Part shown: piece after piece, positions 10,505 through 45,896 of the stretch
How the letters are laid out: each line of letters starts with the position of its first letter
How positions within the stretch are numbered: the first letter of the stretch is position 1
IMG/VR virus record: IMGVR_UViG_3300032268_000986
Span: 278,866-342,865 of that record
Direction: 5' to 3' (one strand)
Length of the DNA stretch: 64,000 bases
Notes under the pieces: model-generated
The model's database searches: none
Seen by the model: only the letters and a program-made list of their open reading frames with translations
What the model was told of the DNA's origin: nothing
Translations under genes and position numbers: made by a program

Positions 10505-10510
10505 TAAATA
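10504..10510 (+). promoter_or_regulatory. T4-type late promoter, leaderless
   Basis: CTAAATA, 5 nt, then ATG 10516; no SD. Confidence 0.65.
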
Positions 10511-10515
10511 TCCCT

Positions 10516-11316
10516 ATGAAATATAGTGTAGTTACCACTTTCAACGCAGAAGGTTATGAGAAATACGGGCGCAGAATGATTGAAACATTCATTCAAAACT
10601 GGCCTGCCACTGTGCAGTTGACCGTTTATGCCGAAGGCTGCAGAGTAAATGAAACGGCCGCCAACCTTGAAGTCTGTGACATTGCAGTGGTCACTGAACT
10701 CACTGCATTCAAGCAACAGTGGCAGGGCGTGGCCCGAGCCAACGGCGATGTCAGTGCTGATCCTGTTAGATCAAAACGTCGGGATGCCGGCAAAGGATTC
10801 AAGTGGGACGCTGTGAGATTTTCACACAAAGTCTACAGTATTTTTCACTGTGCAAAAAATACACACACTGACTGGTTAATTTGGATGGACGCAGACACTG
10901 TGTGTCACAGTCCCGTGACTGAACAGGATCTAACAAGACTATGTCCCGACAATCGAGATCTTTGTTTTCTTGGGCGCCGGGGCAAGTTCAGTGAGTGCGG
11001 ACTGTATGCAATGAATCTTGGCAGACCCAATACGAGAGATTTTTTAACTAAATTTCAAAAGTATTATGACGACGCTGAACAAGGAATTTTTACTCTAGAC
11101 GAATGGCATGACAGTTTTGTTTTTGATGCTGTTCGTCGGCAGACTAGTTTATACGAACTAGACTGGAGCAGTCATTTGATCACCGGAGAAGGTCATCCCT
11201 TGATCAATTCAGACTGGGGTGCATATCTAGATCATCTCAAAGGCAAGCGCAAGACCACAGGACGCAGTCCTGCCACAGACTTAAAAGTTCAACGAACCGA
11301 GGCATACTGGCAATGA
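10516..11316 (+). CDS. GT-A nucleotide-diphospho-sugar transferase
   Basis: Start revised to 10516 (MKYSVVTTF). Motifs RFSHKV, LIWMDADT (DxD), HDSFVFD, HLKG. Confidence 0.8.
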   Translation: MKYSVVTTFNAEGYEKYGRRMIETFIQNWPATVQLTVYAEGCRVNETAANLEVCDIAVVTELTAFKQQWQGVARANGDVSADPVRSKRRDAGKGFKWDAVRFSHKVYSIFHCAKNTHTDWLIWMDADTVCHSPVTEQDLTRLCPDNRDLCFLGRRGKFSECGLYAMNLGRPNTRDFLTKFQKYYDDAEQGIFTLDEWHDSFVFDAVRRQTSLYELDWSSHLITGEGHPLINSDWGAYLDHLKGKRKTTGRSPATDLKVQRTEAYWQ

Positions 11317-12113
11317 CCTGGATATTTCTCAACAAGAAAAACAGTGACGAGTACATAGAAATGTTTGCTCGTGGATGCAGTGCAGTGCCCACTGAGTTAG
11401 AAACCTGGCAGTACCAAGACAGTGATGCGCCCTTGGTGATCCGAGGCATCATGAAACACAAGATTATCAAACAGTGCTGGGCAGACAACCGACCATTCTG
11501 GTACATGGATTCCGGCTATGTTGGCAATAGACCCAGTACTCAAAATCCTCATGGTTGGAAACAGTGGCATAGGATAGTGCCCAACAACCTGCAACATGGT
11601 GCAGTGATCCCAAGGCCTGCTGATCGTTGGCAGCGGCATGACATTGCCATGCCTCGACGTCGGCATGGCAGCAAAATATTACTAGCAGCACCAGACGAAA
11701 AACCCTGTGTGTTTTATGACATCACTCTGTCTGACTGGATTGCACAAACCGTTGCCACAATCAAACAATACACTGACCGAGAAATTGTCATACGTGAGCG
11801 CAACCCCAATCGCCAGGCACGTGTGGCCAGTGACTTGCAATCAGCACTGATGGATGTGCATGCCGTGGTCACATTTAATTCTATTGCAGCCACCGAAAGT
11901 GTGCTGGCTGGTGTGCCGGCATTTGCTCTGGCACCGTCAAATGCTGCCATTCCAGTGTCCAACACTGACTTATCCAAAATCAACAACCCATGGTACCCTG
12001 ATCGAGATCAAATTCATGATTGGGCGTGCCATTTGGCCTATGGGCAGTTTCACAATTCTGAACTGCAGAATGGCACAGCGCACCGAATACTACAGGAGAC
12101 TCTCAATGCGTGA
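11313..12113 (+). CDS. KpsS/capsule-synthesis-like glycosyltransferase (paralog 2)
   Basis: YMDSGY, IVIRER, VVTFNSIAATESVLAGVP, W..HLAYGQF. Confidence 0.6.
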   Translation: MTWIFLNKKNSDEYIEMFARGCSAVPTELETWQYQDSDAPLVIRGIMKHKIIKQCWADNRPFWYMDSGYVGNRPSTQNPHGWKQWHRIVPNNLQHGAVIPRPADRWQRHDIAMPRRRHGSKILLAAPDEKPCVFYDITLSDWIAQTVATIKQYTDREIVIRERNPNRQARVASDLQSALMDVHAVVTFNSIAATESVLAGVPAFALAPSNAAIPVSNTDLSKINNPWYPDRDQIHDWACHLAYGQFHNSELQNGTAHRILQETLNA

Positions 12114-12756
12114 ACACTATGGCTGGTATTTCCCAGATGTTGACACACACTTTCCACAAATGCTAAAGAAAAGTGTTGATCGCGGTGGCCCCGCAGAATA
12201 TCAATTACCTGTGCGCCGTCGCAGTATTGAATTGTGTGCTGGACATGGCACTGCCTTGGACATTGGAGCCAATGTGGGCCTGTGGAGTCGTGACCTAGTG
12301 GACAACTTTTCCCAGGTGATTGCGTTTGAGCCCGTGGCCATCTTTAGAGAATGTCTGGAACGCAATGTGTCTGGCTCTAACTTTTCTATCAGCCCCTTGG
12401 CTCTGGGAAATCAAGAAACTCAGGCCACCATGATCATCACTCCAGGCAATACTGGACACAGTCACCTGGATCCTGCCAGCATGGGCACCGGTGATGTGAA
12501 AGTGGTGACTCTTGACAGCTTGAACATACCCAATGTTGACTATGTCAAGATTGACTGCGAAGGGTACGAGTATCGTGTGTTGCAAGGTGCAGAACAAACC
12601 ATTAAAACCTGTCGTCCTGTTGTGGTAGTGGAACAAAAACCGCATGCAGCCTACAGTGATCAATACGCACAGCATGCAGCCGTCGAGTTGCTGAAATCCT
12701 GGGGCATGACCCGGCTGGACCAAGTCAAGGATGACTGGATCATGGGATGGAACTGA
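12106..12756 (+). CDS. FkbM-family SAM methyltransferase
   Basis: Start revised to 12106 (MREHYGW, SD AGGAG). Motifs LDIGANVG, AFEP, VKIDCEGYE..VLQGA. Confidence 0.9.
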   Translation: MREHYGWYFPDVDTHFPQMLKKSVDRGGPAEYQLPVRRRSIELCAGHGTALDIGANVGLWSRDLVDNFSQVIAFEPVAIFRECLERNVSGSNFSISPLALGNQETQATMIITPGNTGHSHLDPASMGTGDVKVVTLDSLNIPNVDYVKIDCEGYEYRVLQGAEQTIKTCRPVVVVEQKPHAAYSDQYAQHAAVELLKSWGMTRLDQVKDDWIMGWN

Positions 12757-12783
12757 TAATAAAATTTTAAAATAGGAAATAGC

Positions 12784-13314
12784 ATGCCATCAAGTAATAA
12801 AGAAGGTAAGTCAGTGATAAGAGAATGGGTTACAGAATTTGGTCCTGACGTAAAAACTGTACTAGATCTTGGAGTCGGGAACGGAACTTATCATAGGCTG
12901 TATACCAGGAAGTCGCCAGCTCTTAAAGAAGCATACTGGATTGGCGTCGAGGCATGGGAGCCCTATATTCGTGAATTTGATTTGTTAACAAGATATAATA
13001 AGATTGTCAATGAAGATATTAGAACAGTAGATTTCAACACCTTGGGTCCAATCGATTTAGTGTTTGCAGGTGATGTATTGGAACATATAACCAAAGAAGA
13101 AGCAATTAAAGTAGTTGACAATCTATTAAAGGTTGCTAAGAAAATTATTGTTAGTATTCCTATTGTGCATTTTCCACAAGGCAAAGAAGAAGGAAATCCC
13201 TACGAAGCACATGTAAAGGATGATTGGTCACACACAGAAATGTTGGAAACTTTCCCTCAAATTAAACGATCATGGACCGGTAACATCATTGGAGTGTACC
13301 TATTAGAGTTATGA
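12784..13314 (+). CDS. Class I SAM-dependent methyltransferase (AT-rich)
   Basis: VLDLGVGNG, GDVLEH; visibly AT-richer than its neighbours. Confidence 0.85.
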   Translation: MPSSNKEGKSVIREWVTEFGPDVKTVLDLGVGNGTYHRLYTRKSPALKEAYWIGVEAWEPYIREFDLLTRYNKIVNEDIRTVDFNTLGPIDLVFAGDVLEHITKEEAIKVVDNLLKVAKKIIVSIPIVHFPQGKEEGNPYEAHVKDDWSHTEMLETFPQIKRSWTGNIIGVYLLEL

Positions 13315-14012
13315 AAGCATACATAATTAGACTGAAAAACAACGCCATGTCTGAGAAATACGCAGACCTTGGTGTTGCCCAGGCTCGCAAGTTTGGCATT
13401 GATGTTGAATACTTTGACGGCATCAACGGATTGGAATATCAACAGCATGTGACTGAATTGGGCATTGCGCCAAGATACAAATTCAAAAAAGGTCGAGCCG
13501 GGGTTTTTGGTTGCTTTCTAAGTCATTACTACCTATGGCAACAGTGTGCAGCAGGTGATCAGCCTTTTTTGATTCTTGAACACGACGGATATTTTGTCAA
13601 GACCTTGCCCAACAACATACTTGACACATTTACAGATGTGCTCAAACTTGATGATCAGGATCCTTATTCCAAGCACTACGACACCACAGTCACGTCTCAA
13701 CTCAATCAACCCGTAGTTGTAAACAAATATCACAACCCGCAAGCCAAGACTGTGAATGACGGATCAGATTTTGTTGACAAAATTGGCACAGGCAACTACA
13801 TTCGCGGCGCCTACAGTTACATCATCAAACCACATGCAGCACAACGGCTGATTGGCTGGATCAAACAAAATGGATTTGTTCCTGCCGATCAACAGATCGG
13901 CGATGCCGTGGTCGATATACAAGTAACCGTGCCCACCATAGCAAGGTTGCACCCTGACTATCACAACCGAATCAAAGAAATGTCTTTGACCGGGAATCCC
14001 GACCTGTTGTGA
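13311..14012 (+). CDS. GT25 (LPS biosynthesis Lex2B/LgtB-like) glycosyltransferase
   Basis: AYIIRL, FDGING, GCFLSHY.LW, LILEHD, AYSYII.P.AA..L, PAD. Confidence 0.85.
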   Translation: MKAYIIRLKNNAMSEKYADLGVAQARKFGIDVEYFDGINGLEYQQHVTELGIAPRYKFKKGRAGVFGCFLSHYYLWQQCAAGDQPFLILEHDGYFVKTLPNNILDTFTDVLKLDDQDPYSKHYDTTVTSQLNQPVVVNKYHNPQAKTVNDGSDFVDKIGTGNYIRGAYSYIIKPHAAQRLIGWIKQNGFVPADQQIGDAVVDIQVTVPTIARLHPDYHNRIKEMSLTGNPDLL

Positions 14013-14013
14013 T

Positions 14014-14958
14014 TTATTTTGTGCGATTTATTGTTTTGAGAAAAGGCAAAAACTTCTGATAGATGCTGCCATTACGAGCATCCTCATCGCTCCAATGTGC
14101 AGCCGCTAGATCATACACCCATTGAGTTCGATCAAACACCACCGGAGTGTTGATCTGAGAGATGTCATGGTTGGCCACTGCCCAGCTCACACAACTGCTG
14201 TCATCCGCAAACACTGGAACTCCGGCCAACACAGCAGCCACACTGGCCGAACTATTGAATACCACCGCGGCATGAGCATGAGAAAGATTGTCTTTTAGTG
14301 TTGCGGACAATGGGTCAAGTACATGCACGTTGAGCTGTCGACGATAATGCCGATTCCTAAAAATTGAAAAATCATCACTGGCATAGGTTCCTGGATGCGG
14401 TCGTATCATAATGGGTAGATCACTGTGTTGCCTTATCTCAGTGATCTTTTGATTGATCCAGGCTGTTGGATCCAGGGACTTCATTGCAAACCCACCATCT
14501 CGTTGCACACACAACAGTATGTAATTGCCAGACAACTTGGGAGGTGCCATGACAATGTTTAAATCACTGCTGATTCGTTGCCATTGGTCAGGACTGCTGT
14601 TGTGATTGGCATATTCGGCTTTGTCGTAGAACGGGCCTCCTAGACTGTAGCGCAAGTAACTGCCATGATCATCTAGATACTTGAAACAACTGGCATCAAT
14701 ACACATGGTATGCCGACCGGTTCGCCGTTGTTCAGCAATGATTTGTTTGCGTAGTTCAATGTTTCGGCCGCCAGTGTTGGTGGTAGCCCAGCCCAAGATC
14801 ACAGCCAAGTGACTGGGGGTATACCGATTTTCCCACTCTATTGCAACTGACGCTCCTTGGGCCCGTGCTCCTTCAGCAAAGGCTTCCAGGCATGCAATCT
14901 TGCGAGTGTGTTTGCGCGGGTTTGCCACCGAGCTGACATAAACAACAACATCAGCCAC
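14014..14958 (-). CDS. KpsS/capsule-synthesis-like glycosyltransferase (paralog 3)
   Basis: Start revised to GTG 14958, coupled to the upstream stop. Motifs IMIRPHPG, VVFNSSASVAAVLAGVP, W..DLAAAHW. Confidence 0.6.
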   Translation of the reverse strand: MADVVVYVSSVANPRKHTRKIACLEAFAEGARAQGASVAIEWENRYTPSHLAVILGWATTNTGGRNIELRKQIIAEQRRTGRHTMCIDASCFKYLDDHGSYLRYSLGGPFYDKAEYANHNSSPDQWQRISSDLNIVMAPPKLSGNYILLCVQRDGGFAMKSLDPTAWINQKITEIRQHSDLPIMIRPHPGTYASDDFSIFRNRHYRRQLNVHVLDPLSATLKDNLSHAHAAVVFNSSASVAAVLAGVPVFADDSSCVSWAVANHDISQINTPVVFDRTQWVYDLAAAHWSDEDARNGSIYQKFLPFLKTINRTK

Positions 14959-15937
14959 CGTTGAGAATTCTCCAAGCAGTTCCGTCTCGCATTTCTGGTT
15001 CAGTAAATTGACAATAAGACAAGTGTGCAGCCCAGGCCACAACTTCATCCAACGTGGGAATCTTGGGGGTTTCAATTTCACTCAGTGATTGGCTGCACAA
15101 GGCTGCGGCAGCATTAGGACCCAGTGTGATTGCTGGTTTGCCCAGTAACAATGCTTCCCCGGCTGCAATACTGGAAAATGTAACCAAGCAATGTACATCT
15201 CGGTCTAGTGCCATTTCCATAGTATCGTCGTTTACTCGTGTTGATCTACCTTGTTTAGTACGTATTACAATTTCTCGGTCAGTGTGTTGCTTGATTTCAT
15301 TGATGGTGGAATCCAACCAAGATTCAAGATTGATGTTATACAGATTCAAGAGTTTTTGACTGGGAGGAGCCAACAACACCTTGGACCCGGGTCTGAATTT
15401 TGTCAACTGTATTCCGGTGCGTTCCAGTCTGTCATGGGGCCTGTCTATGACTGGACCAAACTTTTGTACATCATTCAGTGTAACGCGATGAAACGTCTTC
15501 TTTTTGCCGTTGCCAAAATATCCAGTGTCAACGTAATAAAAATCACGATTGGCTGCTCGGCAGGCTGCCATTTCTTTCCTTTTGCTAATACCACGCAACA
15601 CACACGGTATCATGGAGTTAGCGTCCCGCTCCCAGCTACTGATTTGTCCGCCAGCTCCTTGCACAAAGCTCTGTAAAATAGGATCGTACATGTGCCCCTT
15701 TTCCTTGTATTTGACTTCGCCTGGATCTGACGCAATTGCCACCACTGTTTGCAATGCAACGGCGTTGCAGGACTGATGTATCTTGGCCGCGGTTATTCCA
15801 TAGTATGCGCCCGACGGATCCACACGGAACTTGAGGATATCTTCAAACAGTTGTCGCACATCTGGTGGCACCATGTCAAATGGCGACCTTGGCAATGGAG
15901 CCGGTTCTTGTTCTTGATCTTGATCTTGATCACTCAT
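14951..15937 (-). CDS. KpsS/capsule-synthesis-like glycosyltransferase (paralog 4)
   Basis: YYVDTGY, IVIRTK, LVTFSSIAAGEALLLGKP, W.AHLSYCQF; acidic low-complexity N-terminus. Confidence 0.6.
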   Translation of the reverse strand: MSDQDQDQEQEPAPLPRSPFDMVPPDVRQLFEDILKFRVDPSGAYYGITAAKIHQSCNAVALQTVVAIASDPGEVKYKEKGHMYDPILQSFVQGAGGQISSWERDANSMIPCVLRGISKRKEMAACRAANRDFYYVDTGYFGNGKKKTFHRVTLNDVQKFGPVIDRPHDRLERTGIQLTKFRPGSKVLLAPPSQKLLNLYNINLESWLDSTINEIKQHTDREIVIRTKQGRSTRVNDDTMEMALDRDVHCLVTFSSIAAGEALLLGKPAITLGPNAAAALCSQSLSEIETPKIPTLDEVVAWAAHLSYCQFTEPEMRDGTAWRILNGG

Positions 15938-16619
15938 GAGTTATTTGCTGACAATGCAGTGTGAGTTTGTGTTCTTGATGCCAGGCTTCATTCTGAGGAG
16001 TGTTGGCAAACTCATCAAAGCAGGGCGTTCCCAAGGTGTAGTGCAACAACTTGGCATTGGCATTGGGTCCAAACTCATCAGGTAACCAATTCCATTCTAT
16101 TGGCAGTTCACCGATGCGTGAATCATCGATCCAAGAAAATCTGTGCAGTTCTGCTCCGGTGGCCTTCTGCACGTATTCAGGAGTTAGTTTTCGATTTGGA
16201 AAACTGTTGCAGTTCCAGAGAATTACACTGCTCCAATTCTTGCGTGGGTAATCTTCGTTTTTGGCACCCAGGTACTTTGTTGGCATGCGTGTTTTATAGT
16301 TGTGTTTGACCACTTGCACATCCATGTAAGGATTTCTCATGTCCCAAAGTTCAGCAATGTCGCCACGCACAATCATGTCACCGTCGATAAAAATAGCCGA
16401 ACCAGTAAATCCCATCAGGTAAGGTACTAGGAAACGTGTGTAGATAAAGTGGTTGCTACCGTCGGTGTGTGTTTCGTCGTAATCTTTAAATAGATTAAGT
16501 GCCACTGGCACAATACTCACAGGACGACTTGCATTTCTAATAATACTGTTAACGCAGGTATGATATGCTATGGCCTCACGTGGATCATAGCCAATAAAAA
16601 TTGGTATGATCTCTTTCAT
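15930..16619 (-). CDS. GT-A (GT8-like) glycosyltransferase
   Basis: IFIGYDPRE, TRFLVP, FIDGDM (DxD), RKNWSS, LLHYTLGTP. Confidence 0.85.
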   Translation of the reverse strand: MKEIIPIFIGYDPREAIAYHTCVNSIIRNASRPVSIVPVALNLFKDYDETHTDGSNHFIYTRFLVPYLMGFTGSAIFIDGDMIVRGDIAELWDMRNPYMDVQVVKHNYKTRMPTKYLGAKNEDYPRKNWSSVILWNCNSFPNRKLTPEYVQKATGAELHRFSWIDDSRIGELPIEWNWLPDEFGPNANAKLLHYTLGTPCFDEFANTPQNEAWHQEHKLTLHCQQITHE

Positions 16620-17380
16620 CGACGCTCAATGTCCTCTTCAACACAATCTTCACCGTATTGAATTTCAATTAGTCGCAAGGGCTTGTCAGTTTCGTTGCAC
16701 AACTGGTGCCACTCGTTAAGTTTGATCCAAGTACTCTGATGACGGGCAGGACTGGCCATTAGATCACGATCAGTTGAGTGTGGATCCACGGTGTACACTG
16801 TGGCTTCACCTTCGGCCACAAACCAAAACTCAGCACGTTTTTCATGCCGTTGCATGCTCAAGCATGTCTTGGGACTCACAGTGAGTTCTTTGAGTTTGAC
16901 ATGATTTCCAACTTCGTGCAACACACGATAATAGCCCCAGGCACGACTGGTACGGGGTTTTTTCCAGTCTTCAAGTATCCAGCTAGAACTATTTTTCTTG
17001 TCCGCACCGCCAACACCAAACGCAAATGTCAATTGATCATCGACAACATCCATTTCTGGAATGTTCAGGTGTGTGCGATCACCACCATTGGCAAACACCA
17101 AGGTTGCGTCAGGGTAGTGTGCTCTGACTTGACGTATGAACTCCTTGGCCGAACCATCAGCATCGTCAAATGTGTACACTTCGTCCACCATGGCAAGATT
17201 GTTTATCACACACAATCTTTCTGTCCAGGGCATGAATGGGCGACCTTTTTTGCGTGTGAGCCATTCGTCTGAATTGAGTCCCACAATCAGCATGTCGCCT
17301 AGAGCGCGGGCAGCTTTGAAATACGCAATATGCCCAGAATGCAGCGGATCAAAGCCGCCAGTTACAAGTACAATTTTCAT
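16616..17380 (-). CDS. Cytidylyltransferase-family (RfaE-II/TagD-like) nucleotidyltransferase fused to a ManC-type C-terminal cupin
   Basis: Start revised to 17380 (MKIVLVTGGFDPLHSGH, HxGH). GLNSD, NGGDR, SSSWI; then WGYYRVL, LSMQRH..RAEFW, IEIQYG..C.E.DI.R. Confidence 0.85.
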   Translation of the reverse strand: MKIVLVTGGFDPLHSGHIAYFKAARALGDMLIVGLNSDEWLTRKKGRPFMPWTERLCVINNLAMVDEVYTFDDADGSAKEFIRQVRAHYPDATLVFANGGDRTHLNIPEMDVVDDQLTFAFGVGGADKKNSSSWILEDWKKPRTSRAWGYYRVLHEVGNHVKLKELTVSPKTCLSMQRHEKRAEFWFVAEGEATVYTVDPHSTDRDLMASPARHQSTWIKLNEWHQLCNETDKPLRLIEIQYGEDCVEEDIERR

Positions 17381-17400
17381 ACAGGTATTTACACCTGTAT
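17379..17400 (-). promoter_or_regulatory. Late promoter GTAAATA inside an 8-bp hairpin that masks the start codon
   Basis: Minus strand ATACAGGT-GTAAAT-ACCTGTAT-G; the 3' arm includes the AT of the ATG. Confidence 0.7.
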
Positions 17401-17841
17401 ATCTTCCATGCCAGCAGTTCTTAGACGAACCACATGGCCCATTTGCCACTGTTTGGTGTCCAGGCCTTTGAGGATGCCCAACCAGCGGTTGCGCAGATAT
17501 GCCACTTCGTTGATTATGGTTTCATAGTCAATTACTTCGTCTTCACCGTCCACGTACTTTTCAGCATCCCTGGATGTCAGTGCGCGAGCATATCCTTCAA
17601 GATACTTTTGAAAGTGTTTTCTGCGTATCTTACGCAACTGGATGTTAAGGTAATTGAGCACAGCTTCGATCTCTTGCAACTGATTGAATCTCTGCTCTGT
17701 GATACCTGGCAAGGCCGTGATGTTTTTCTCTACCAAGCCGCCAATCTTGCAGTCTTTTTTAGCTGACTCAAGTTCGTTCTCGTAGTGAGATATGAAATCA
17801 GGAATGAGTCCTAGATCAGCTACTACGCGACTGTACCACAT
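17389..17841 (-). CDS. uvsY: Recombination mediator UvsY
   Basis: 150 aa helical protein with YLEGYARALTSRDAEKYVDGE and LDTKQWQMGH; lies downstream of uvsX. Confidence 0.8.
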   Translation of the reverse strand: MWYSRVVADLGLIPDFISHYENELESAKKDCKIGGLVEKNITALPGITEQRFNQLQEIEAVLNYLNIQLRKIRRKHFQKYLEGYARALTSRDAEKYVDGEDEVIDYETIINEVAYLRNRWLGILKGLDTKQWQMGHVVRLRTAGMEDIQV

Positions 17842-18095
17842 CAGTTTTCCCAGTCATGGTCGTCTTCTTCTTCAACGTCGTCTTCTTCTTCGCTGCCTTC
17901 GTCATGCCCTTGATCCATGTAGTCAGTAAGAGCACGTTTGATATCCGAATCTCCCTTGAAGGCATCACGGATGTCTTCTACAGAACAATCATTGTCAACC
18001 ATGACTGATACCACAATGTCAGCAGCTTCGCTACGATCCACTGAGTTTATGTATCGCTTGAGCTCACTCCAAATTTCACTTACGATATGTTCCAT
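17841..18095 (-). CDS. Small acidic hypothetical protein
   Basis: 84 aa with an acidic tail, coupled between uvsX and uvsY. Confidence 0.75.
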   Translation of the reverse strand: MEHIVSEIWSELKRYINSVDRSEAADIVVSVMVDNDCSVEDIRDAFKGDSDIKRALTDYMDQGHDEGSEEEDDVEEEDDHDWEN

Positions 18096-19150
18096 TATTC
18101 TTCCTCAACGTCAACAACAGGTGTGGCATCCTTTTGATTGCCAAAATCTTTCATCACAGTGTCAAGACAGCCGTCAGTATTGGCTTCCCATGCCTTGCGA
18201 AACTTCTTGATGATCTCGCCATCGCTTGTGGTAAACACTAGACTGTTGCCTTCGCGTTTGAGCAGGCCTTTTTTCTCAATCAAGTCCACAAGACCTGAGT
18301 AAGGGCTCATGCCTGTTTCATAAGGAATCTTGACTTGCACTCCCTCGAACGGCTTGGCATAGCGTGTTTTCATTACTTTACAGCCAGCACGAATACCAGT
18401 TACATCTGAAATCTTGTTGCCGTCTTCGTCCTCTTTGAGTTTCATCTTCTTCATGGCCACCACAATTGAGCTGGCGTAAATGAAACCTTGACCACCTGAA
18501 ATCTTGTCGTCTGGATCAAACATGTCTTGACTGGCGTATGTGTGATTGGTACAAACCAGGCCCACGTTGTAACTACCAAACATGTTGACACAGTTACGCA
18601 CCAAGGCGGTAAGAGCTTTGGGCTTGCGACCTAGGTCACCTTTCATTTCGCCTGCATCAAATTGATTCACATCAGTGGGTGTCAGCAACATGCCCAGGCT
18701 GTCAATTACAAACATGACCTTGGGTCGCTCGGCAGGATCAAGAGCTTTGTAGTCGCTCATGAATGTAGAGATAGTTTTAGCTACATCGTCAATCATGGCC
18801 ATTGACAATTTGAGTAACTTGCTGTCACTGGTATCAACTCCCAGGGCCTTGAGCCAGTCTTCGTCCAAGGCATTTTCGCTGTCAATCAACACTACAAAGA
18901 TGCCTTGCTGTTGTGCATGTTTGATAATGTTGCCACTACAGATGTAACTTTTACCTGCGCCCGAGTCACCGGCAAACACCGTGACCTTGCCCAAGGGGAT
19001 ACCTCGATCAAAGTCTCCTGAGATCAAGTAGTTCAAAGCATAGTTGCCTGTGGAGATCCAGTCTGTGGGATCATTGAATCCAATCGACAATCCGTCGATA
19101 CTTTTTGTAATTTCCTTGCGGAATTTTGATACGTCAAATGGTTTAGCCAT
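18095..19150 (-). CDS. uvsX: RecA-like recombinase UvsX
   Basis: ISTG, GDSGAGKS, LIDSENA, VIDSLG, TNHTY, SGG.G..YASS, KTR. Confidence 0.92.
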   Translation of the reverse strand: MAKPFDVSKFRKEITKSIDGLSIGFNDPTDWISTGNYALNYLISGDFDRGIPLGKVTVFAGDSGAGKSYICSGNIIKHAQQQGIFVVLIDSENALDEDWLKALGVDTSDSKLLKLSMAMIDDVAKTISTFMSDYKALDPAERPKVMFVIDSLGMLLTPTDVNQFDAGEMKGDLGRKPKALTALVRNCVNMFGSYNVGLVCTNHTYASQDMFDPDDKISGGQGFIYASSIVVAMKKMKLKEDEDGNKISDVTGIRAGCKVMKTRYAKPFEGVQVKIPYETGMSPYSGLVDLIEKKGLLKREGNSLVFTTSDGEIIKKFRKAWEANTDGCLDTVMKDFGNQKDATPVVDVEEE

Positions 19151-20741
19151 GGTATTTTCCTTTGTAAATGATATCTGCTATTTCTGGATGTGTCTGATTA
19201 AATTTTTGATCTCTTATATTGTCTAATTTTAGCATGAATTTTGATAGTTCGTCAATTAAATCTGGTGAATATTTGTTCTGTTTGAGTAAGGCAATGATAG
19301 GAAATACATTGTGTTTTATTAACTTGTCATGATCAATTTGAGATAATTTGTCAATGACTTGAGTTGTTAATTCCGTATTCATTGCTGTTATGCTTAAAAA
19401 TTTTGGGTGTTCTAATAAATTAAAATTTAATTTGTTAAATTTTTTTGTATCTACCCAGGTTATTAACTGATCAAGATAATAAACATTTTGAACATTAACT
19501 GTGGTAAAAATACTAAGGATCATGTTTGGTAGTTTGTTTTCTAAGAATTTATCTAAGTTAACATTGACCAAATCCCATTTCCCCCCGCGCTCTAATTCAA
19601 ACCGTGTACCTATGTTATCTATGCTAAATGCAATGTCAACTTGTCGGAACAACTTCCATTTTTCAAACAAATGTGCTGGGTACACAGACCCGTTTGAATT
19701 GTAATGTAGTCTAATTTTGTGTGCCAGGTCATGCTCTATTAGATAATCTAAAAATGTCTCTTGTTGCTTGATGAGAAACGGCTCGCCACCATAAAAATCA
19801 ATGTTAACCAGCTGATTTCCCAACGTGTTAAACATTTTCCAAATTTGATCATTTTTGACCCACTGTCCTTTTCGATTGAGATTTTTGAGATCAATAATAG
19901 AGTCAAAGTGTCGTGCCTGTTCTTCTGCTATTTTTGAACTAGCGTCTGAATTGCATATTCTGCATGCAAAATTACAAAGATTTCCTAGTTTTAAATCTAG
20001 ACTAACTAAATTTTCAAGTTGATCTTGCTCTATGTCTAAACATTGCGCATCAATCCCAAGACAATCACTGAACCACTGTCGATTTGATTGCCCTTTATGT
20101 TGTTCTTTCATCCAGCAGCTCGAACATCCGGCAGGACGATCCCCGTCGAGAAATTGTGTTCTTAACCTTGTTAAATAGTCACTGTGGTAGACTTCTTCAA
20201 TACTATTAGTATTGATATTGTAGGGAACATTGTTGGAATCCGTTATTGATTCTTTATACACACAACAAGGTCTAAATTCGCCTTGTGACGAAATTTCTAA
20301 ATGTGCCCATGGACTAAAACAAAATGTGTCAGGCAAGGTAATTGCAGGATTCTTAACAACCTCAGGTGCGACGTCACTAAATTTTATGTCCAGTGTTGAA
20401 AAAATACAATCATCTGTTGAATAGTTGCGTCTAACTAATTCAAGATGATCTTGATCAATGTCAGAACCAGAACTACAAATTAAAATAAAAAAGTTAGATA
20501 TATCTAACAGCGTTGCGCTTTTTTGTATGTGTATTAAAGTTTCAACTGATATCAAATTTCTACTGTACAGAACTATTCGACTATGATCACTGTATTCTGG
20601 TTGGTACCATTGTTTAAATAATTTATACAGTGTTTTTCGAGGTTGACCAAGTAATTGATCTAGGTCGATTACACCAACTATTTGATAGTTGTAATGTTGT
20701 TCTAAATACTGTTTTAGGTCAGTTGAGGGTATCGGTGTCAT
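19143..20741 (-). CDS. Radical SAM/SPASM protein with N-terminal extension (AT-rich insertion)
   Basis: FCFSPW...PCC...GCSSC, CNFACRIC, FYGGEP; AT-rich codon usage unlike its flanks. Confidence 0.88.
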   Translation of the reverse strand: MTPIPSTDLKQYLEQHYNYQIVGVIDLDQLLGQPRKTLYKLFKQWYQPEYSDHSRIVLYSRNLISVETLIHIQKSATLLDISNFFILICSSGSDIDQDHLELVRRNYSTDDCIFSTLDIKFSDVAPEVVKNPAITLPDTFCFSPWAHLEISSQGEFRPCCVYKESITDSNNVPYNINTNSIEEVYHSDYLTRLRTQFLDGDRPAGCSSCWMKEQHKGQSNRQWFSDCLGIDAQCLDIEQDQLENLVSLDLKLGNLCNFACRICNSDASSKIAEEQARHFDSIIDLKNLNRKGQWVKNDQIWKMFNTLGNQLVNIDFYGGEPFLIKQQETFLDYLIEHDLAHKIRLHYNSNGSVYPAHLFEKWKLFRQVDIAFSIDNIGTRFELERGGKWDLVNVNLDKFLENKLPNMILSIFTTVNVQNVYYLDQLITWVDTKKFNKLNFNLLEHPKFLSITAMNTELTTQVIDKLSQIDHDKLIKHNVFPIIALLKQNKYSPDLIDELSKFMLKLDNIRDQKFNQTHPEIADIIYKGKYHG

Positions 20742-20763
20742 TTGAGTTTAATCAGAGAAATTA

Positions 20764-20786
20764 CAAGGGGCCTTAAAGGCCCCTTG
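20764..20786 (-). terminator. Terminator-like hairpin downstream of gp32
   Basis: 10-bp stem CAAGGGGCCT/AGGCCCCTTG with a 3-nt loop, followed by TAATTTCT on the minus strand. Confidence 0.65.
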
Positions 20787-20800
20787 TGTCTACTATCTGC

Positions 20801-21802
20801 TTATTGCTTCTGACGACTACGAATCATGGCCAAGATGTCTTCGGCCTTTTGTGGTGGTTTGTTGGCTGCTACAGGTGCCGACGCTGCCGGAACATCATCC
20901 ACATCAAATGGAGGATCTTCGTTGACCACGTCTGGCTTGGCTGCCACTGGTGCTGGACGGCTAGCAGGCTTTGCTGGCGCATCTTCGTCAGTGCTGGCTG
21001 CGGCACCACCAGGTGCTTGAACGCCAGCTGGACGGAAGTACTGGCCCCAACGTTCTGTGTCGTAAGGTTGTCCATCCACACTTGCTTCAAACATCTCTTT
21101 GATGACCTTGAGTTCGACCTCGCCGGGCTTCTTGGGCAGGAATGTGCTGAGATCAAACAGACCATGTTTTTCAACAGCGGCTGCTTCCTCTTCAGACAAG
21201 GCCGATTCCTTACGTGCCCACTTTGAGCCGTTGTAGTCGGCAAATCCACCCTTGGCACCTTTGCTGATGCGGAAGTCTAGACCACGCAGGTAGTCAGTTG
21301 GCAATTCTTCCAACTCAGGATCCATCAGCGCACCCTTGATGGTGGTAAAGATCTGCGGGCCAATGATGAATCTGCGGATTGGGTTTTCTGGTGTTTTGTC
21401 CTCACCAATGGGATTTTCGCGAACAAAGCCTTGGAAAATATAACTGCGTTTTTTCCAGTACTTGCGACCCATTTCTTCAAGGCTCTTGTCCTTGAACCAG
21501 GTGCGTACTTCGGCCAGGATGGGGCATGCCTCGCCCCACATTTCCACGCAGGGTACTTGTACCATGACCTGCTTGGATTCCATCTCTCCTTTGATGCCAT
21601 TAAAGGGCAAACGAATCATGGCTCGTTCTTGCCAAAAGAAAGTGTTTTTAGAGTTACCATCAGGGAGGAAGCGTAGTGTGGCCGATTGGCCTTCTTCCAT
21701 GTTCCAGTGCGGGTAGATAGAATTATCACCGCCTGTGCTTTGGCCGCCTTGTTTGTTGTCAGCTGCCTGTAGTCGTGCTCGAATTTCTGCTAGAGATGCC
21801 AT
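20801..21802 (-). CDS. gp32: Single-stranded DNA-binding protein (T4 gp32-like)
   Basis: LRFLPD, CPI, YWKKRSY, D...G.DFRI, DYNGSKW, acidic C-terminus with DPPFD. Confidence 0.88.
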   Translation of the reverse strand: MASLAEIRARLQAADNKQGGQSTGGDNSIYPHWNMEEGQSATLRFLPDGNSKNTFFWQERAMIRLPFNGIKGEMESKQVMVQVPCVEMWGEACPILAEVRTWFKDKSLEEMGRKYWKKRSYIFQGFVRENPIGEDKTPENPIRRFIIGPQIFTTIKGALMDPELEELPTDYLRGLDFRISKGAKGGFADYNGSKWARKESALSEEEAAAVEKHGLFDLSTFLPKKPGEVELKVIKEMFEASVDGQPYDTERWGQYFRPAGVQAPGGAAASTDEDAPAKPASRPAPVAAKPDVVNEDPPFDVDDVPAASAPVAANKPPQKAEDILAMIRSRQKQ

Positions 21803-21902: not shown

Positions 21903-21942
21903 AGTATATGCGCTTTTGTCCGCTGTGTCAAGTTTATTTATA
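21903..21942 (-). promoter_or_regulatory. Tandem late (TATAAATA 21935-21942) and early (TTGACA-17-TATACT 21903-21931) promoters for gp32
   Basis: Exact T4 late consensus and near-consensus sigma70 boxes. An AAAAGCGCA/TGCGCTTTT inverted repeat (21883-21917) overlaps the -10 box. Confidence 0.8.
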
Positions 21943-23703
21943 TCATTTGAGCAAAGCCAGTGATTTTATTCTTGCCAGTTCGTCTGACTCGTAGTAGCTG
22001 CCTGTGATTGCGGCATTGTAGTTCATGGGGTCGTCGTTGCCTTCGTCCATGACCGGAGCCATGCCGCCGGCCACTGTGCCCATTTCATACATGCCTCCAC
22101 ATTCGGCCAGGCCATGTTCGGGACAATAAGCACCTTCGGCAGTCATGTTGCAGGCGCTGCCTTCTGTAGTGACTGGCATGGCCATGGGAGAGATGAGATT
22201 TTCAGCTAAGCCGCGATCTTGAGCAAATCGATCTGATATCCATTCATATGGATCACCATCACGTGCTTTCTTTGTGCCATATGGCATGTCATCAAAATAA
22301 TAGTCATACAGGGCATGGTACAAATCATCACTCATGTCCCCGGTGGCTTCAAAGTCACGCACCTCTTTGCCAAATCTGTTACAGATGTGATCCAAGGTGC
22401 TGCCAGTAGAATCAGTCAGCACACCTTCGTTTAGGTCATCGTACTCGCCTTCTTGCTCTTCGGGTGGTGTGTTGCCCTGTGGAACGTCAACACCTAGTTC
22501 ATTCAACCGATCCATGATGGCAGGATTTTCCCAGATGCTGACGTTGGGATCTTGTTCAGCTTGGTCGCCAATGAGATCAAACAGCTGATCATCGCCCACA
22601 AGGTCATACAACTGCTCAGTGGCATTGGTACCATCGGGGCCGGCTTCCAGCGGCTGACTCATCAGTTGTTTCAAACGATTCTGTTGTTCTGGAGTTTCGG
22701 GCAACGCCCAGGTTCCCTCGGCTAGATTATTGATCCAGTTTTCAAAGATTTGTGCTTCTTTCATGTCTTGTCCTTGTTGTTGTATTCTTGCCAGCAAGGG
22801 CAAGGCCTCTTCGATACGTGCATCCAGTGTTTGTTCCACAAACAAACTCTTGATGTCTTCAACCAAAGATTCATGATCGGCCACTTGCATGGGCGACCAT
22901 GATTCAAAATATGCTGAGTAACCACGATGGGTGCCCATGTGTTTGAGATTTTCTCGCAGTTGTTGATAATAGGTATTGGCTTGCTCAATGACTGATTGTT
23001 TCACGCTTTCGGCCACGGCATCATGGCTGGCTCGACGAAAACGACTCAAGACCTTGAGTTCAGTCACTGTTTCTGTGATATGACTGCCGCGAACATCGTA
23101 GGGTTTGCCGCCCTGACGCACATGCTCTAACATGGCTCTGCCGCCGGCCATGTTGACAAACGGCAACTTGAATCGCTCTTGATCAGCTGTTTCAATAAAC
23201 AAACTTTCAACGTAGCGGAATCTTGCATCGTTTTCGCCCAGCACACGATTGTGACGGATCATGAGTCTGGCTTCAGTGGGTTCGCCTGCGTAGCTGACCT
23301 TGCGTGTGCCATAGTAGCCTTCAAACAGGCCTTCTTGTATGGCAGCAATACCAGCTTGTACTCGTTTGAGTTTGTTGAGATTTGTCAGTGTGCCGGTCCA
23401 GCGATTGCGGTTGGCCAACTGCATGAGTTGCTGTTGAAAATCAAAGAACTCATTGCGGTCCTGGGCATCTTCAATGGTTTTGCCCAGATTGTCACCGTAC
23501 ATGATCATCATTTCGTTGTCATTGCCCAGTACAATCACCATGGTGCCATAGTTTTTACCCGAGCCAGATACATAGTCAAAGCTGAATGTCTTGGCATCTT
23601 CGGTGTCGCAGGGACGGCCGTCTCGACCCAGAGTTTCAGGATGAAAGTCCCGAGTATCCAGTAAATCACTTAGTTGTTGTTCAAAATTGAGGGTTTGTGC
23701 CAT
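21943..23703 (-). CDS. Late protein of unknown function with modular acidic C-terminal half (candidate head-internal/core protein)
   Basis: 586 aa, leaderless late promoter CTAAATA at 23711-23717, repeated hydrophobic-x-E sites (IQE, VAE, LAE, LNE, MDE). Confidence 0.6.
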   Translation of the reverse strand: MAQTLNFEQQLSDLLDTRDFHPETLGRDGRPCDTEDAKTFSFDYVSGSGKNYGTMVIVLGNDNEMMIMYGDNLGKTIEDAQDRNEFFDFQQQLMQLANRNRWTGTLTNLNKLKRVQAGIAAIQEGLFEGYYGTRKVSYAGEPTEARLMIRHNRVLGENDARFRYVESLFIETADQERFKLPFVNMAGGRAMLEHVRQGGKPYDVRGSHITETVTELKVLSRFRRASHDAVAESVKQSVIEQANTYYQQLRENLKHMGTHRGYSAYFESWSPMQVADHESLVEDIKSLFVEQTLDARIEEALPLLARIQQQGQDMKEAQIFENWINNLAEGTWALPETPEQQNRLKQLMSQPLEAGPDGTNATEQLYDLVGDDQLFDLIGDQAEQDPNVSIWENPAIMDRLNELGVDVPQGNTPPEEQEGEYDDLNEGVLTDSTGSTLDHICNRFGKEVRDFEATGDMSDDLYHALYDYYFDDMPYGTKKARDGDPYEWISDRFAQDRGLAENLISPMAMPVTTEGSACNMTAEGAYCPEHGLAECGGMYEMGTVAGGMAPVMDEGNDDPMNYNAAITGSYYESDELARIKSLALLK

Positions 23704-45486: not shown

Positions 45487-45896
45487 AAGCAGTTGGTGTT
45501 TGGTTTTATGCGGCCAGCACTGGTCGATATCTATACCTGTTGCGCAATGATCACAAACATCCTGGCGCCTGGGGCCTACCTGGGGGCAAACTTGAATCTG
45601 GTGAAACCTTGCTGGGTGGCATGGAACGTGAATGCACTGAAGAACTAGGCAGCTTTCCAGTGTATCAGCGACTGGTGCCTGTGGAGAAATTCACTGCTGG
45701 GGATTTTGAGTATCACACCTGGGTGTGTGTGGTCACTGGTGAATTTGTGCCTGTGCTAAATCACGAACACCTGGGGTATGCCTGGATCAATTCTAGTGTG
45801 TTTCCCAGGCCTATGCATCCGGGTCTTTGGAGCACAGTGAATCTCGAAGCTGTGCAAAGCAAGCTGCTCTTGATAGAGCAGGCATTGCAATTATAA
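45483..45896 (+). CDS. Nudix hydrolase
   Basis: Start revised to GTG 45483. Nudix box GLPGGKLESGETLLGGMERECTEELG; EH..YAW. Confidence 0.9.
   Translation: MKAVGVWFYAASTGRYLYLLRNDHKHPGAWGLPGGKLESGETLLGGMERECTEELGSFPVYQRLVPVEKFTAGDFEYHTWVCVVTGEFVPVLNHEHLGYAWINSSVFPRPMHPGLWSTVNLEAVQSKLLLIEQALQL

What the first reader, a model, noticed from the sequence alone, without database searches (positions are those of the whole stretch)
17379..17400. Late promoter embedded in a hairpin that hides the start codon (uvsY to glycan operon switch)
Seen: a perfect 8-bp inverted repeat with GTAAATA at its centre; the 3' arm covers the AU of the AUG, and the promoter also contains the uvsY TAA stop. Established: T4 genes e, soc and I-TevI are silenced on early read-through transcripts by RBS-sequestering hairpins and are released when a late promoter starts inside the stem. 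Inference: the same logic keeps the glycan operon untranslated on uvsX-uvsY read-through mRNA, here using a leaderless late message.
Basis: partly seen in the sequence, partly recalled or inferred. Interest (0 to 1): 0.6.

Follow-up and report, generated by a model that had tools for sequence, protein, structure and literature searches.

The report
Leaderless late promoter inside a hairpin
In an uncultured 343-kb jumbo phage, a short T4-like late promoter (TAAATA) sits five bases before the start codon of a sugar-modification gene, so it probably makes an mRNA with no leader; a hairpin that would hide this start codon on longer transcripts is present, but its function is not shown.

Summary
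On the minus strand, 17400..17379 is a perfect 8-bp inverted repeat, 10 bp with two G-U pairs. Its loop holds the UvsY-like gene's TAA stop and the start of TAAATA; its 3' arm covers the ATG (17380) of a nucleotidyltransferase-cupin gene.

The promoter reading is well supported:
- TAAATA is the most enriched hexamer before genes in this phage (63 of 429 upstream regions, about 6 expected).
- It precedes the tail tube, tail sheath and baseplate genes.
- The genome encodes a gp55-like late sigma factor.
- TAAATA-N5-ATG occurs 18 times, and 17 of these open long ORFs. There is no Shine-Dalgarno, the start is always ATG, and position -1 is always a pyrimidine. This fits transcription starting on the A of ATG.
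- In relatives this gene keeps TAAATA-N5-ATG whatever lies upstream, or has a Shine-Dalgarno instead.

The hairpin part is weaker. The stem is conserved in close relatives, but usually with a mismatch, and it shows no compensatory changes. Its 5' arm lies in translated uvsY codons. Across 34 independent sites, N5 pairs with nearby downstream sequence more often than chance, which fits silencing of read-through RNA.

No RNA data could be obtained. Verdict: a new variant of the T4 e/soc/I-TevI logic, partly supported.

The parts
17378..17401 (-). RNA hairpin predicted on read-through transcripts. Perfect 8-bp arms at 17400..17393 and 17386..17379, extended to 10 pairs by G-U at both ends. The UAAA loop is 17391..17388. 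The 3' arm includes the whole AUG.
   Evidence: Sequence; folds; inverted-repeat scan. AUG pairing probability is 0.99/0.94/0.67 in read-through RNA, against 0.02 when the RNA starts at the A of AUG.
17386..17391 (-). TAAATA, the core of a late-type promoter at the -10 position. Its first three bases are the TAA stop of the UvsY-like gene.
   Evidence: Most enriched upstream hexamer in the genome (63 of 429, about 6 expected). Precedes tail tube, sheath and baseplate genes. Conserved before this gene in relatives. A gp55-like sigma factor is encoded.
17381..17385 (-). N5 spacer (CCTGT) between promoter and ATG. It is predicted not to be transcribed from this promoter. It forms the core of the 3' arm of the hairpin on read-through RNA.
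   Evidence: N5 is the commonest spacing (18 sites, 17 opening ORFs). Position -1 is a pyrimidine at 17 of 17 sites.
17380..17380 (-). Predicted transcription start, the A of the ATG (give or take 1 nt). This would give a leaderless mRNA.
   Evidence: Inferred from the T4 late-promoter geometry: box about one helical turn upstream of the start (PMC2988020). The exact numbering, -13 to -6, is from my own knowledge. Also inferred from the fixed spacing, the absence of a Shine-Dalgarno, ATG-only starts and the pyrimidine/purine rule at -1/+1. Not measured.
17389..17841 (-). UvsY-like recombination mediator gene (150 aa). Its last four codons form the 5' arm of the hairpin.
   Evidence: phrog_231, E=4e-14. 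Over 600 related contigs in IMG/VR.
16616..17380 (-). Nucleotidyltransferase (cytidylyltransferase-like) fused to a cupin (mannose-6-phosphate isomerase C-terminal type), 254 aa. First gene of the minus-strand glycan cluster.
   Evidence: Pfam PF01467 (3.9e-13) and PF01050 (1.2e-20); phrog_7878.
14014..16619 (-). Rest of the minus-strand cluster. It holds a GT8-like glycosyltransferase (15930..16619), a 328-aa protein with a faint DUF6716 glycosyltransferase match (14951..15937), and an unknown ORF (14014..15081; its start is uncertain).
   Evidence: The genes overlap or abut, and no TAAATA lies between them on this strand.
17841..21802 (-). Upstream co-directional genes from which read-through would come: gp32-like SSB (20801..21802), radical SAM/SPASM protein (19143..20741), UvsX (18095..19150) and an 84-aa ORF (17841..18095).
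   Evidence: From the radical SAM gene to uvsY the genes overlap by a few bases. The scan found no terminator-like site between uvsX and the ATG at 17380.
21903..21945 (-). Candidate upstream promoters before the SSB gene: a sigma-70-like TTGACA-17-TATACT (21931..21903) with a TAAATA just before it (21945..21940).
   Evidence: Consensus matches only.
10505..10518 (+). A second TAAATA-N5-ATG (ATG at 10516). It opens the convergent plus-strand half of the glycan island, which holds GT2-like, DUF6716-like, FkbM methyltransferase, methyltransferase and GT25 genes up to 14012.

Best explanation
The window is part of an uncultured 343-kb jumbo phage that has T4-style late transcription in a reduced form: a gp55-like sigma factor and a minimal TAAATA promoter with no -35 element.

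At 17391..17386 (minus strand) this promoter overlaps the stop codon of uvsY and lies exactly five bases before the ATG of the first glycan gene. Transcription from it should begin on, or within one base of, the A of that ATG. That would give a leaderless mRNA for the minus-strand glycan genes, translated through its 5'-terminal AUG without a Shine-Dalgarno.

Longer transcripts that run through from the SSB/uvsX/uvsY genes contain the five spacer bases and the uvsY codons. These fold into a 10-bp hairpin that pairs the AUG, and an AGGUG 11 nt upstream of it, so initiation there is disfavoured. The promoter-initiated RNA lacks the 5' arm and has a free AUG.

Status of each step:
- Shown: the motif, its genome-wide and clade-wide behaviour, the sigma factor gene and the predicted folds.
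- Inferred: the start site, late timing, and any effect of the hairpin on translation.

My odds: late-type promoter about 0.8; leaderless start about 0.7; hairpin selected to silence read-through RNA about 0.35. The confidence figure given for this explanation (0.55) is for the whole statement, weighted towards the promoter and leaderless part.
For: The motif behaves as a promoter:
- TAAATA is the top enriched hexamer within 70 nt upstream of ORFs (63 of 429, about 6 expected). It is under-represented genome-wide (142 copies, about 235 expected from composition).
- Its spacing to the ATG falls into two groups: N4-N7 with no Shine-Dalgarno, and N13-N27 with an AGGA-type Shine-Dalgarno between.
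- No base is conserved upstream of the motif.
- TAAATA precedes the tail tube, tail sheath, baseplate/fibre and virion structural genes.
- A 304-aa gp55-like sigma factor is encoded: phrog_12791 7e-73, phrog_234 1.6e-23, T4 gp55 1.6e-6.
- Related cultured jumbo phages CBB and GAP32 were already predicted to use ATAAATA late promoters with a gp55-like sigma (PMC5259590).

The start looks leaderless:
- TAAATA-N5-ATG occurs 18 times, and 17 of these open ORFs of at least 50 codons. Control hexamers give 1-11 hits per offset and no comparable peak; the reversed pattern gives 2.
- Starts are ATG only (25 of 25 at N4-N6, no GTG or TTG). Position -1 is C or T at 17 of 17 sites.

Relatives keep the arrangement:
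- In 84 distinct upstream contexts, the homologous gene keeps TAAATA (sometimes TAAGTA)-N5-ATG. This holds whether uvsY overlaps it, uvsY ends 16 nt earlier, another gene precedes it, or the region is intergenic. A minority have an AGGA Shine-Dalgarno and no TAAATA.
- Across 1.73 Mb of related loci there are 260 N5 hits (228 open ORFs, 54 N-terminal classes), against 3-37 at other offsets.

The hairpin:
- It is predicted to form in read-through RNA and not in RNA starting at +1 or -1.
- Close relatives keep 9 of 10 pairs (89.7% of cells paired; slid controls 19-40%).
- At 34 independent sites, N5 plus ATG is complementary to the first 30 nt of the ORF more than in permutations (mean run 3.97 vs 3.48, p<0.0005; runs of 5 or more: 9 vs 3.3). 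Parallel-complement, direct-repeat and mirror-repeat controls are flat.

Precedent: T4 e and I-TevI (PMC3014915).
Against: - There are no RNA data of any kind.
- T4's full TATAAATA box is not used, and no gp33 homologue was found. The mechanism may therefore differ from T4's in detail.
- No compensatory change occurs in 58 distinct relatives, and the window's perfect stem is a rare variant. Pair 22-39 is unpaired in 56 of 58, and the usual form folds at -7 to -8 kcal/mol.
- In subclades where uvsY ends 16 nt earlier, the upstream partner is different or absent.
- Across independent sites, pairing of N5 with upstream sequence, which is the geometry at this site, is not enriched (p=0.39).
- Uninterrupted hairpins over the AUG are no commoner at these sites than at random ATGs. 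AUG pairing is higher than at Shine-Dalgarno-led starts (0.67 vs 0.51, p=5e-4) but barely above random ATGs (0.59, p=0.07).
- The 5' arm lies within the last codons of uvsY, so every ribosome that finishes uvsY melts it.
- An internal AUG without a Shine-Dalgarno would be poorly used anyway, which makes a silencer partly redundant.
Confidence: 0.55

Rival explanations
1. The promoter and leaderless start are real, but the hairpin has no function of its own. It is a by-product. The 5' arm is fixed by the UvsY C-terminal codons (Ile-Gln-Val-stop). The 3' arm is an inherited spacer that happens to match, after a deletion brought the uvsY stop into the promoter.
For: There are no compensatory changes, and the window's extra A-U pair is found in only 2 of 58 distinct relatives. 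The same spacer (CCTGC or CCTGT) also occurs in subclades where the upstream partner is absent. Upstream pairing is not enriched at independent sites. Uninterrupted hairpins are not enriched compared with random ATGs, and the chance of one such hairpin among 31 sites is about 0.4.
Against: The Gln and Val codons show no synonymous variation in the overlap class, although the search pattern allowed it and neighbouring codons vary freely. Most spacer variants keep pairing: C to T changes give G-U. N5 pairs with flanking sequence more than chance at independent sites.
Confidence: 0.3
2. The hairpin enforces translational coupling. On polycistronic RNA the AUG is closed unless a ribosome translating uvsY reaches the UAA in the loop and melts the 5' arm. 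It can then re-initiate 8 nt downstream. The glycan gene would thus be made at a low level tied to uvsY early, and from the leaderless RNA late.
For: The geometry is read directly from the sequence. The stop is in the loop, the 5' arm is the last four codons, and the AUG lies 8 nt after the stop. In 5 of 21 internal sites of this class, the TAA of TAAATA is the upstream gene's stop. Coupling of this type is established, for example MS2 coat-replicase (my own knowledge).
Against: There is no Shine-Dalgarno to hold the 30S subunit. In sister subclades the stop lies 24-27 nt (in one, 42 nt) before the AUG, yet TAAATA-N5-ATG is kept. Many sites of the class have no upstream co-directional gene at all.
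Confidence: 0.15
3. TAAATA at a fixed distance from the AUG is an RNA-level translation signal that replaces the Shine-Dalgarno, not a promoter. The gene would then be translated from polycistronic RNA.
For: The motif and the Shine-Dalgarno are interchangeable between homologues. The spacing to the AUG is fixed.
Against: The same motif stands 13-27 nt upstream of Shine-Dalgarno-led structural genes, where it cannot act in that way. It matches the core of the T4 late box, and a gp55-like sigma is present. The pyrimidine at -1 with a purine at +1, and ATG-only starts, fit a transcription start and leaderless translation. At this very site the motif would lie in the loop and closing pairs of a stable hairpin whose 3' arm pairs the AUG.
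Confidence: 0.07
4. The hairpin is a 3'-end element for the uvsX-uvsY transcript, either a terminator or a barrier to exonucleases.
For: It stands exactly at the end of uvsY. The genome has many more stem-loops than chance (105 vs about 38).
Against: No U-run follows it; the next bases are A-rich. The terminator scan does not list it. Bona fide terminator-like stems in this genome are GC-rich with U-tails.
Confidence: 0.06
5. The palindrome acts in DNA, either as a binding site for a dimeric regulator of this promoter or as an extruded hairpin promoter like those of phage N4.
For: It is a perfect palindrome centred on the promoter. A few other TAAATA sites have short flanking inverted repeats, for example at window 26996 and genome 77174.
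Against: Flanking inverted repeats are not a general feature of TAAATA sites. No sequence is shared between the arms at different sites.
Confidence: 0.04

Closest known systems
T4 gene e (lysozyme), soc and I-TevI: inhibitory hairpins on early read-through RNA, relieved by a late promoter that starts inside the structure (PMC3014915)
   Same: A late promoter is embedded in the DNA that encodes the 5' part of a stem. The stem occludes the initiation region only on longer transcripts. A late-function gene follows early or middle genes on the same strand.
   Different: Here the late RNA is predicted to be leaderless, whereas in T4 it keeps a Shine-Dalgarno leader. The stem covers the AUG rather than a Shine-Dalgarno. 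The 5' arm lies in translated codons of the upstream gene, and the promoter overlaps that gene's stop codon. The promoter is TAAATA, not TATAAATA. Nothing has been tested experimentally.
Predicted ATAAATA late promoters and gp55-like sigma of Rak2-like jumbo phages CBB and GAP32 (PMC5259590)
   Same: The core motif is the same and precedes structural genes. A gp55-like sigma is present and no gp33 was found. These are jumbo myovirus-type genomes with UvsX, UvsY and gp32-like genes.
   Different: GAP32, PA5oct, Phosso and T4 show no excess of TAAATA-N5-ATG (5 vs 8, 15 vs 12, 3 vs 2 and 10 vs 5 against the reversed-pattern control). The leaderless arrangement is particular to this uncultured clade.
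Leaderless mRNAs such as lambda cI from PRM, and the many leaderless genes of actinobacteria (PMC4633059, listed; lambda is from my own knowledge)
   Same: The AUG is at the 5' end, there is no Shine-Dalgarno, and a strict AUG is required.
   Different: Here the arrangement is tied to one phage sigma-type promoter and used for some 25-30 genes of a phage whose other genes have ordinary Shine-Dalgarno sites. Transcript maps of the jumbo phages AR9 and phiKZ found no leaderless mRNAs.
Aeh1 mobE hairpin that sequesters the ribosome binding site (Gibb and Edgell 2009, cited in PMC3014915)
   Same: A hairpin over the initiation region of a gene nested among earlier-expressed genes in a T4-related phage.
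   Different: As for T4 e: a leadered message, and the Shine-Dalgarno rather than the AUG is sequestered.

Membership tests
T4-type late promoter (gp55-dependent) | 8-bp TATAAATA box at the -10 position | tested here: not met
   Only the 6-bp core TAAATA is conserved. At the N5 sites the preceding base is A 6, G 5, C 5, T 1, with no base conserved. TATAAATA occurs 9 times in 343 kb, about 16 expected. At this site the box reads GGTGTAAATA.
T4-type late promoter (gp55-dependent) | No conserved -35 element | tested here: met
   Column counts at 17 N5 sites show no conserved position from -20 to -12.
T4-type late promoter (gp55-dependent) | Phage encodes a gp55-family sigma factor | tested here: met
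   G000:C1:13780-14616 (minus strand), 304 aa: phrog_12791 7e-73, phrog_234 1.6e-23, T4 gp55 1.6e-6.
T4-type late promoter (gp55-dependent) | Co-activator gp33 and coupling to the sliding clamp gp45 | tested here: inconclusive
   No match to T4 gp33 or to phrog_254. gp33 is small and diverges fast; CBB also lacks a detectable one. gp45 was not searched.
T4-type late promoter (gp55-dependent) | Precedes virion structural (late) genes | tested here: met
   TAAATA precedes the tail tube (gene start 35169), tail sheath (38506), baseplate/fibre-like genes (57784, 60793) and a virion structural protein (23703).
T4-type late promoter (gp55-dependent) | Transcripts start about 6 nt after the box and appear late, depending on replication | not testable with these tools
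Initiation-region hairpin relieved by an internal late promoter (T4 e / soc / I-TevI type) | The late transcript lacks the 5' arm of the stem | tested here: met
   By geometry, using the inferred start: the whole 5' arm (17401..17392) lies upstream of the predicted +1 (17380). AUG pairing falls from 0.99 to 0.02.
Initiation-region hairpin relieved by an internal late promoter (T4 e / soc / I-TevI type) | The stem occludes the Shine-Dalgarno and/or start codon on longer RNA | tested here: met
   AUG paired at 0.99/0.94/0.67 in read-through contexts. This is a prediction only.
Initiation-region hairpin relieved by an internal late promoter (T4 e / soc / I-TevI type) | The 5' arm is untranslated, so the structure persists on early RNA | tested here: not met
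   The 5' arm is the last four codons of the UvsY-like ORF and the stop codon is in the loop.
Initiation-region hairpin relieved by an internal late promoter (T4 e / soc / I-TevI type) | Read-through transcription from upstream early or middle promoters | tested here: inconclusive
   A sigma-70-like promoter lies at 21931..21903, and no terminator-like site lies between uvsX and 17380. There are no RNA data.
Initiation-region hairpin relieved by an internal late promoter (T4 e / soc / I-TevI type) | The stem is conserved or covaries among relatives | tested here: inconclusive
   89.7% of cells are paired in 58 distinct relatives, but there are 0 compensatory changes and one pair is usually broken. 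Other subclades use other or no partners. Family-wide, N5 pairing is enriched downstream and not upstream.
Leaderless mRNA | 5' end at, or within a few nt of, the A of the AUG | not testable with these tools
   Inferred from the N5 spacing and the T4 geometry.
Leaderless mRNA | No Shine-Dalgarno, and a strict AUG start | tested here: met
   There is no room for a Shine-Dalgarno in N4-N7. 25 ORF-opening ATG against 0 GTG or TTG at N4-N6; Shine-Dalgarno-led genes use 11 TTG or GTG out of 126.

The most novel reading that the evidence does not exclude
A widespread clade of uncultured jumbo phages (several hundred IMG/VR contigs) expresses some 25-30 genes per genome as leaderless late mRNAs. These include the swappable cassettes of a hypervariable glycan island next to uvsY. 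The mRNAs come from a minimal gp55-type promoter set exactly five bases before the ATG. The five untranscribed bases serve as a built-in silencer: they pair with flanking sequence only on read-through RNA. Promoter, spacer and ATG together would then form a portable unit that makes any cassette late-only without a Shine-Dalgarno.
Probability: 0.3. Interest if true: 0.75.

Novelty: new variant of a known kind. Interest (0 to 1): 0.58.

Why it matters
If 5'-end mapping confirms it, this would be the first gp55-type (T4-like) late transcription system that routinely makes leaderless mRNAs.

- It would extend the classic T4 e/soc/I-TevI timing device to messages that have no leader at all.
- It bears on how much leaderless translation the unknown host supports. 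That is a clue to the host, since cultured relatives (GAP32, PA5oct, Phosso, T4) lack the pattern.
- It gives a simple rule for annotation: TAAATA-N5-ATG marks true starts. My naive ORF caller, which takes the first ATG/GTG/TTG in a frame, mis-set the start of this very gene.
- It suggests how hypervariable glycan cassettes can be exchanged at a conserved promoter/start junction and still be expressed late.
- The 14-bp promoter-start unit could also be a compact expression element for phage engineering.

Tried and rejected
- T4's full TATAAATA as the promoter: rejected, because it is not enriched.
- Genome-wide excess of strong uninterrupted hairpins over the AUG of leaderless-type sites: not found compared with random ATGs. 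Comparing by hand, sites with and without an upstream co-directional gene have about the same mean AUG pairing (about 0.67 each).
- Covariation in the uvsY-overlap class: none, 0 compensatory changes. The pattern search fixed most of the 5' arm, so the test had little power on that side.
- A first test of downstream pairing was inflated by homologous coding sequence. I repeated it on 34 sites with distinct upstream DNA and distinct proteins, with orientation controls.
- Independent covariation tests at two other hairpin sites failed. The 79-aa gene at genome 77174 has no detectable relatives. Homologues of the 202-aa gene at genome 174911 are mostly Shine-Dalgarno-led and lack the motif.
- Intrinsic terminator: rejected, because there is no U-run.
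- Known RNA family: none at the site.
- gp33 homologue: not found.
- The big protein searches, structure prediction and complex prediction were not needed.
Full report
**What is there.**

The window is the last 64 kb of a 342,865-bp IMG/VR virus record with 47% G+C. Its UvsX gene is only 64-68% identical in DNA to those of jumbo phages such as Sinorhizobium phage Phosso, GAP32 and PA5oct. It is therefore an uncultured jumbo phage, not a T4-like phage in the narrow sense.

The genes around the site all read on the minus strand:
- gp32-like SSB, 20801..21802
- radical SAM/SPASM protein, 19143..20741
- UvsX, 18095..19150
- an 84-aa ORF, 17841..18095
- UvsY-like, 17389..17841
- a nucleotidyltransferase-cupin fusion, 16616..17380
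- a GT8-like glycosyltransferase, 15930..16619
- two further ORFs

The plus-strand genes 10516-14012, which converge on these, are also glycan enzymes: GT2-like, FkbM and other methyltransferases, and GT25. "uvsY to glycan operon switch" is a fair description.

**The observation.**

On the minus strand, 17400..17393 and 17386..17379 are perfect 8-nt complementary arms. With G-U pairs at both ends the stem is 10 bp (17401..17378) with a UAAA loop, at -10.3 kcal/mol. The uvsY TAA (17391..17389) opens the hexamer TAAATA (17391..17386). Five bases follow, then the ATG (17380..17378), all of which is in the 3' arm.

**Is TAAATA a promoter?**

T4's 8-bp TATAAATA is not enriched in this genome: 9 copies, about 16 expected. 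The 6-bp core, however, is the most enriched hexamer upstream of ORFs. It is present in 63 of 429 upstream windows against about 6 expected, although it is under-represented in the genome as a whole (142 copies, about 235 expected). Any base may precede it, and nothing further upstream is conserved.

It stands before the tail tube, tail sheath, baseplate/fibre-like and virion structural genes of this window. The genome encodes a 304-aa gp55-like late sigma factor (phrog_12791 7e-73; T4 gp55 1.6e-6). No gp33 was found.

The same picture was predicted for the cultured jumbo phages CBB and GAP32: ATAAATA before structural genes, a gp55-like sigma and no gp33 (PMC5259590). I take TAAATA to be this phage's late-type promoter.

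**Is the message leaderless?**

The distance from TAAATA to the start codon falls into two groups. One is 13-27 nt with an AGGA-type Shine-Dalgarno in between. The other is 4-7 nt with no room for one.

TAAATA-N5-ATG occurs 18 times, and 17 of these open ORFs of at least 50 codons. N4 adds 7 sites, 6 of them open. Control hexamers give 1-11 hits per offset with no comparable peak, and the reversed pattern gives 2. At N4-N6 the ORF-opening codon is always ATG (25 of 25, no GTG or TTG). At the 17 N5 sites, position -1 is always C or T.

T4 late promoters sit about one helical turn before the start (PMC2988020). By my own knowledge the box spans -13 to -6, which leaves five bases before +1. TAAATA-N5-A therefore puts +1 on the A of the ATG. 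The site in question is of this commonest N5 type.

**Comparative evidence.**

Several hundred IMG/VR contigs encode close relatives of UvsY and of the nucleotidyltransferase. In 84 distinct upstream contexts the transferase gene keeps TAAATA-N5-ATG, occasionally as TAAGTA. This holds in four situations:
- the uvsY stop lies inside the motif, as in the window
- uvsY ends 16 nt earlier
- other genes precede the transferase
- the region is intergenic

A minority have an AGGA Shine-Dalgarno and no TAAATA. The same swap between the motif and a Shine-Dalgarno is seen for another gene. Over 1.73 Mb of related loci there are 260 N5 hits (228 open ORFs, 54 different N-termini), against 3-37 at other spacings. 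T4, Phosso, GAP32 and PA5oct show no such excess. The arrangement belongs to this clade and behaves as a functional alternative to a Shine-Dalgarno.

**The hairpin.**

In read-through RNA the AUG is paired with probability 0.99/0.94/0.67. In RNA starting at +1 or -1 the figure is 0.02-0.09. The evidence for selection is mixed.

*Against selection:*
- In 58 distinct relatives of the overlap class the stem is 89.7% paired (slid controls 19-40%), but without a single compensatory change.
- The A-U pair that makes the window's stem perfect is unpaired in 56 of the 58. The usual form is 6 bp, a mismatch (mostly C-C), then 3 bp, at about -7 to -8 kcal/mol.
- Other subclades have different or no upstream partners.
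- Strong uninterrupted hairpins are no commoner at the 31 sites of this class than at random ATGs. The chance of one hairpin of this strength among the 31 is about 0.4.
- The 5' arm is made of the last uvsY codons, so terminating ribosomes would open it. That is unlike T4 e, soc and I-TevI (PMC3014915).
- There is no good Shine-Dalgarno to silence, only an AGGUG 11 nt upstream.

*For selection:*
- Most spacer variants keep the pairing.
- At 34 independent N5 sites (distinct upstream DNA and distinct proteins), the spacer plus ATG is complementary to the first 30 nt of the ORF more than in permutations: mean run 3.97 vs 3.48 (p<0.0005), and runs of 5 or more at 9 sites vs 3.3 expected. Three orientation controls are flat.

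That spacer is absent from a transcript starting at the ATG, so such stems can form only on read-through RNA. The same test for upstream partners, which is the geometry at this site, is not significant (p=0.39).

Other sites in this genome look similar. At genome 77174 a stem-loop of -29 kcal/mol encloses both promoter and AUG. At 174911 and 163918 the spacer and AUG pair with the first codons of the ORF.

**Conclusion.**

The promoter and the leaderless start are well supported by sequence statistics and by comparison with relatives, but they have not been measured. The hairpin is real and is conserved in near relatives. Its silencing role is a reasonable inference with some family-wide statistical backing, but it is not demonstrated, and coupling or coincidence remain live alternatives.

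The finding is a new variant of a known regulatory device. The more notable result is the clade-wide use of TAAATA-N5-ATG.

Rfam has nothing at the site.

Noticed in passing
window 10505-10518 (+) and 10516-14012 (+): The convergent plus-strand half of the glycan island also begins with TAAATA-N5-ATG. It holds GT2-like, DUF6716-like, FkbM methyltransferase, a second methyltransferase and GT25 genes. The ORF listing GTG start at 10456 is probably wrong; the ATG at 10516 fits the motif.
   Followed up: partly
related loci L167-L285 (alignment A1), junction equivalent to window 17378-17401: The uvsY end, TAAATA, spacer and ATG-AAA junction is conserved even where a different gene follows (N-termini MKDIIPI.., MKTQRTW.., MKKVVIV..). 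The region after uvsY therefore looks like a hypervariable cassette island with a conserved promoter/start boundary.
   Followed up: partly
G000:C1:77145-77190 (-), outside the window: A stem-loop of -29 kcal/mol (a 10-bp outer stem plus a 4-bp inner stem) encloses a TAAATA-N5-ATG and its AUG. Its 5' arm lies in untranslated spacer after the upstream stop. This is the cleanest T4 gene-e-like arrangement in the genome. The 79-aa product has no detectable relatives.
   Followed up: partly
G000:C1:174890-174925 (-) and 163900-163935 (-): The spacer plus AUG forms 7-bp and 10-bp stems with the first codons of the ORF (-8.1 and -9.8 kcal/mol). These stems could not form on a transcript starting at the ATG.
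   Followed up: partly
window 20763-20787 (-): A perfect 11-bp GC-rich stem with a 3-nt loop lies directly after the gp32-like SSB gene and 22 nt before the radical SAM gene. Its tail is only weakly U-rich. It could be a partial terminator or an RNA stabiliser that divides the upstream operon.
   Followed up: no
window 21903-21945 (-): A near-consensus sigma-70-type promoter (TTGACA-17-TATACT) lies immediately after a TAAATA, about 100 nt before the SSB gene. These may be tandem early and late promoters, as for T4 gene 32.
   Followed up: no
window 19143-20741 (-) and 25854-26996 (-): Two radical SAM proteins, the first with a SPASM domain. One is embedded between the SSB and UvsX genes; the other sits in the structural module behind a TAAATA-N4-ATG. 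This is an unusual place for such enzymes.
   Followed up: no
relatives L028, L045, L048, L051, L054, L062, L066, L076, L123 (upstream of the transferase gene): Where the gene heads an intergenic region, a TATATACG-like element lies 5-6 nt before TAAATA. It may be a second overlapping promoter or a regulator site.
   Followed up: no
G000:C1:170286-170307 (-): A perfect 9-bp stem with TAAATA spanning the 5' arm and loop, followed by a U-run and then an ATG 8 nt later. It looks like an intrinsic terminator that happens to contain, or deliberately overlaps, the promoter motif.
   Followed up: no
G000:C1:91028 and 91900 (-): TAAATA-N4/5-ATG sites stand directly after sequences that look like tRNA 3' ends (T-arm and acceptor stem, one ending in CCA). 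Small ORFs may therefore be interleaved with a tRNA cluster. The window itself has no tRNA.
   Followed up: no
genome-wide; relatives L005, L020, L077, L139: TAAGTA is the second most enriched upstream hexamer. It replaces TAAATA at the same N5 distance in some relatives, so it is probably a functional promoter variant.
   Followed up: partly
window 45891-52571 (-): A 2226-aa ORF in the structural module, preceded by TAAATA at N16 with a Shine-Dalgarno. It was not characterised.
   Followed up: no
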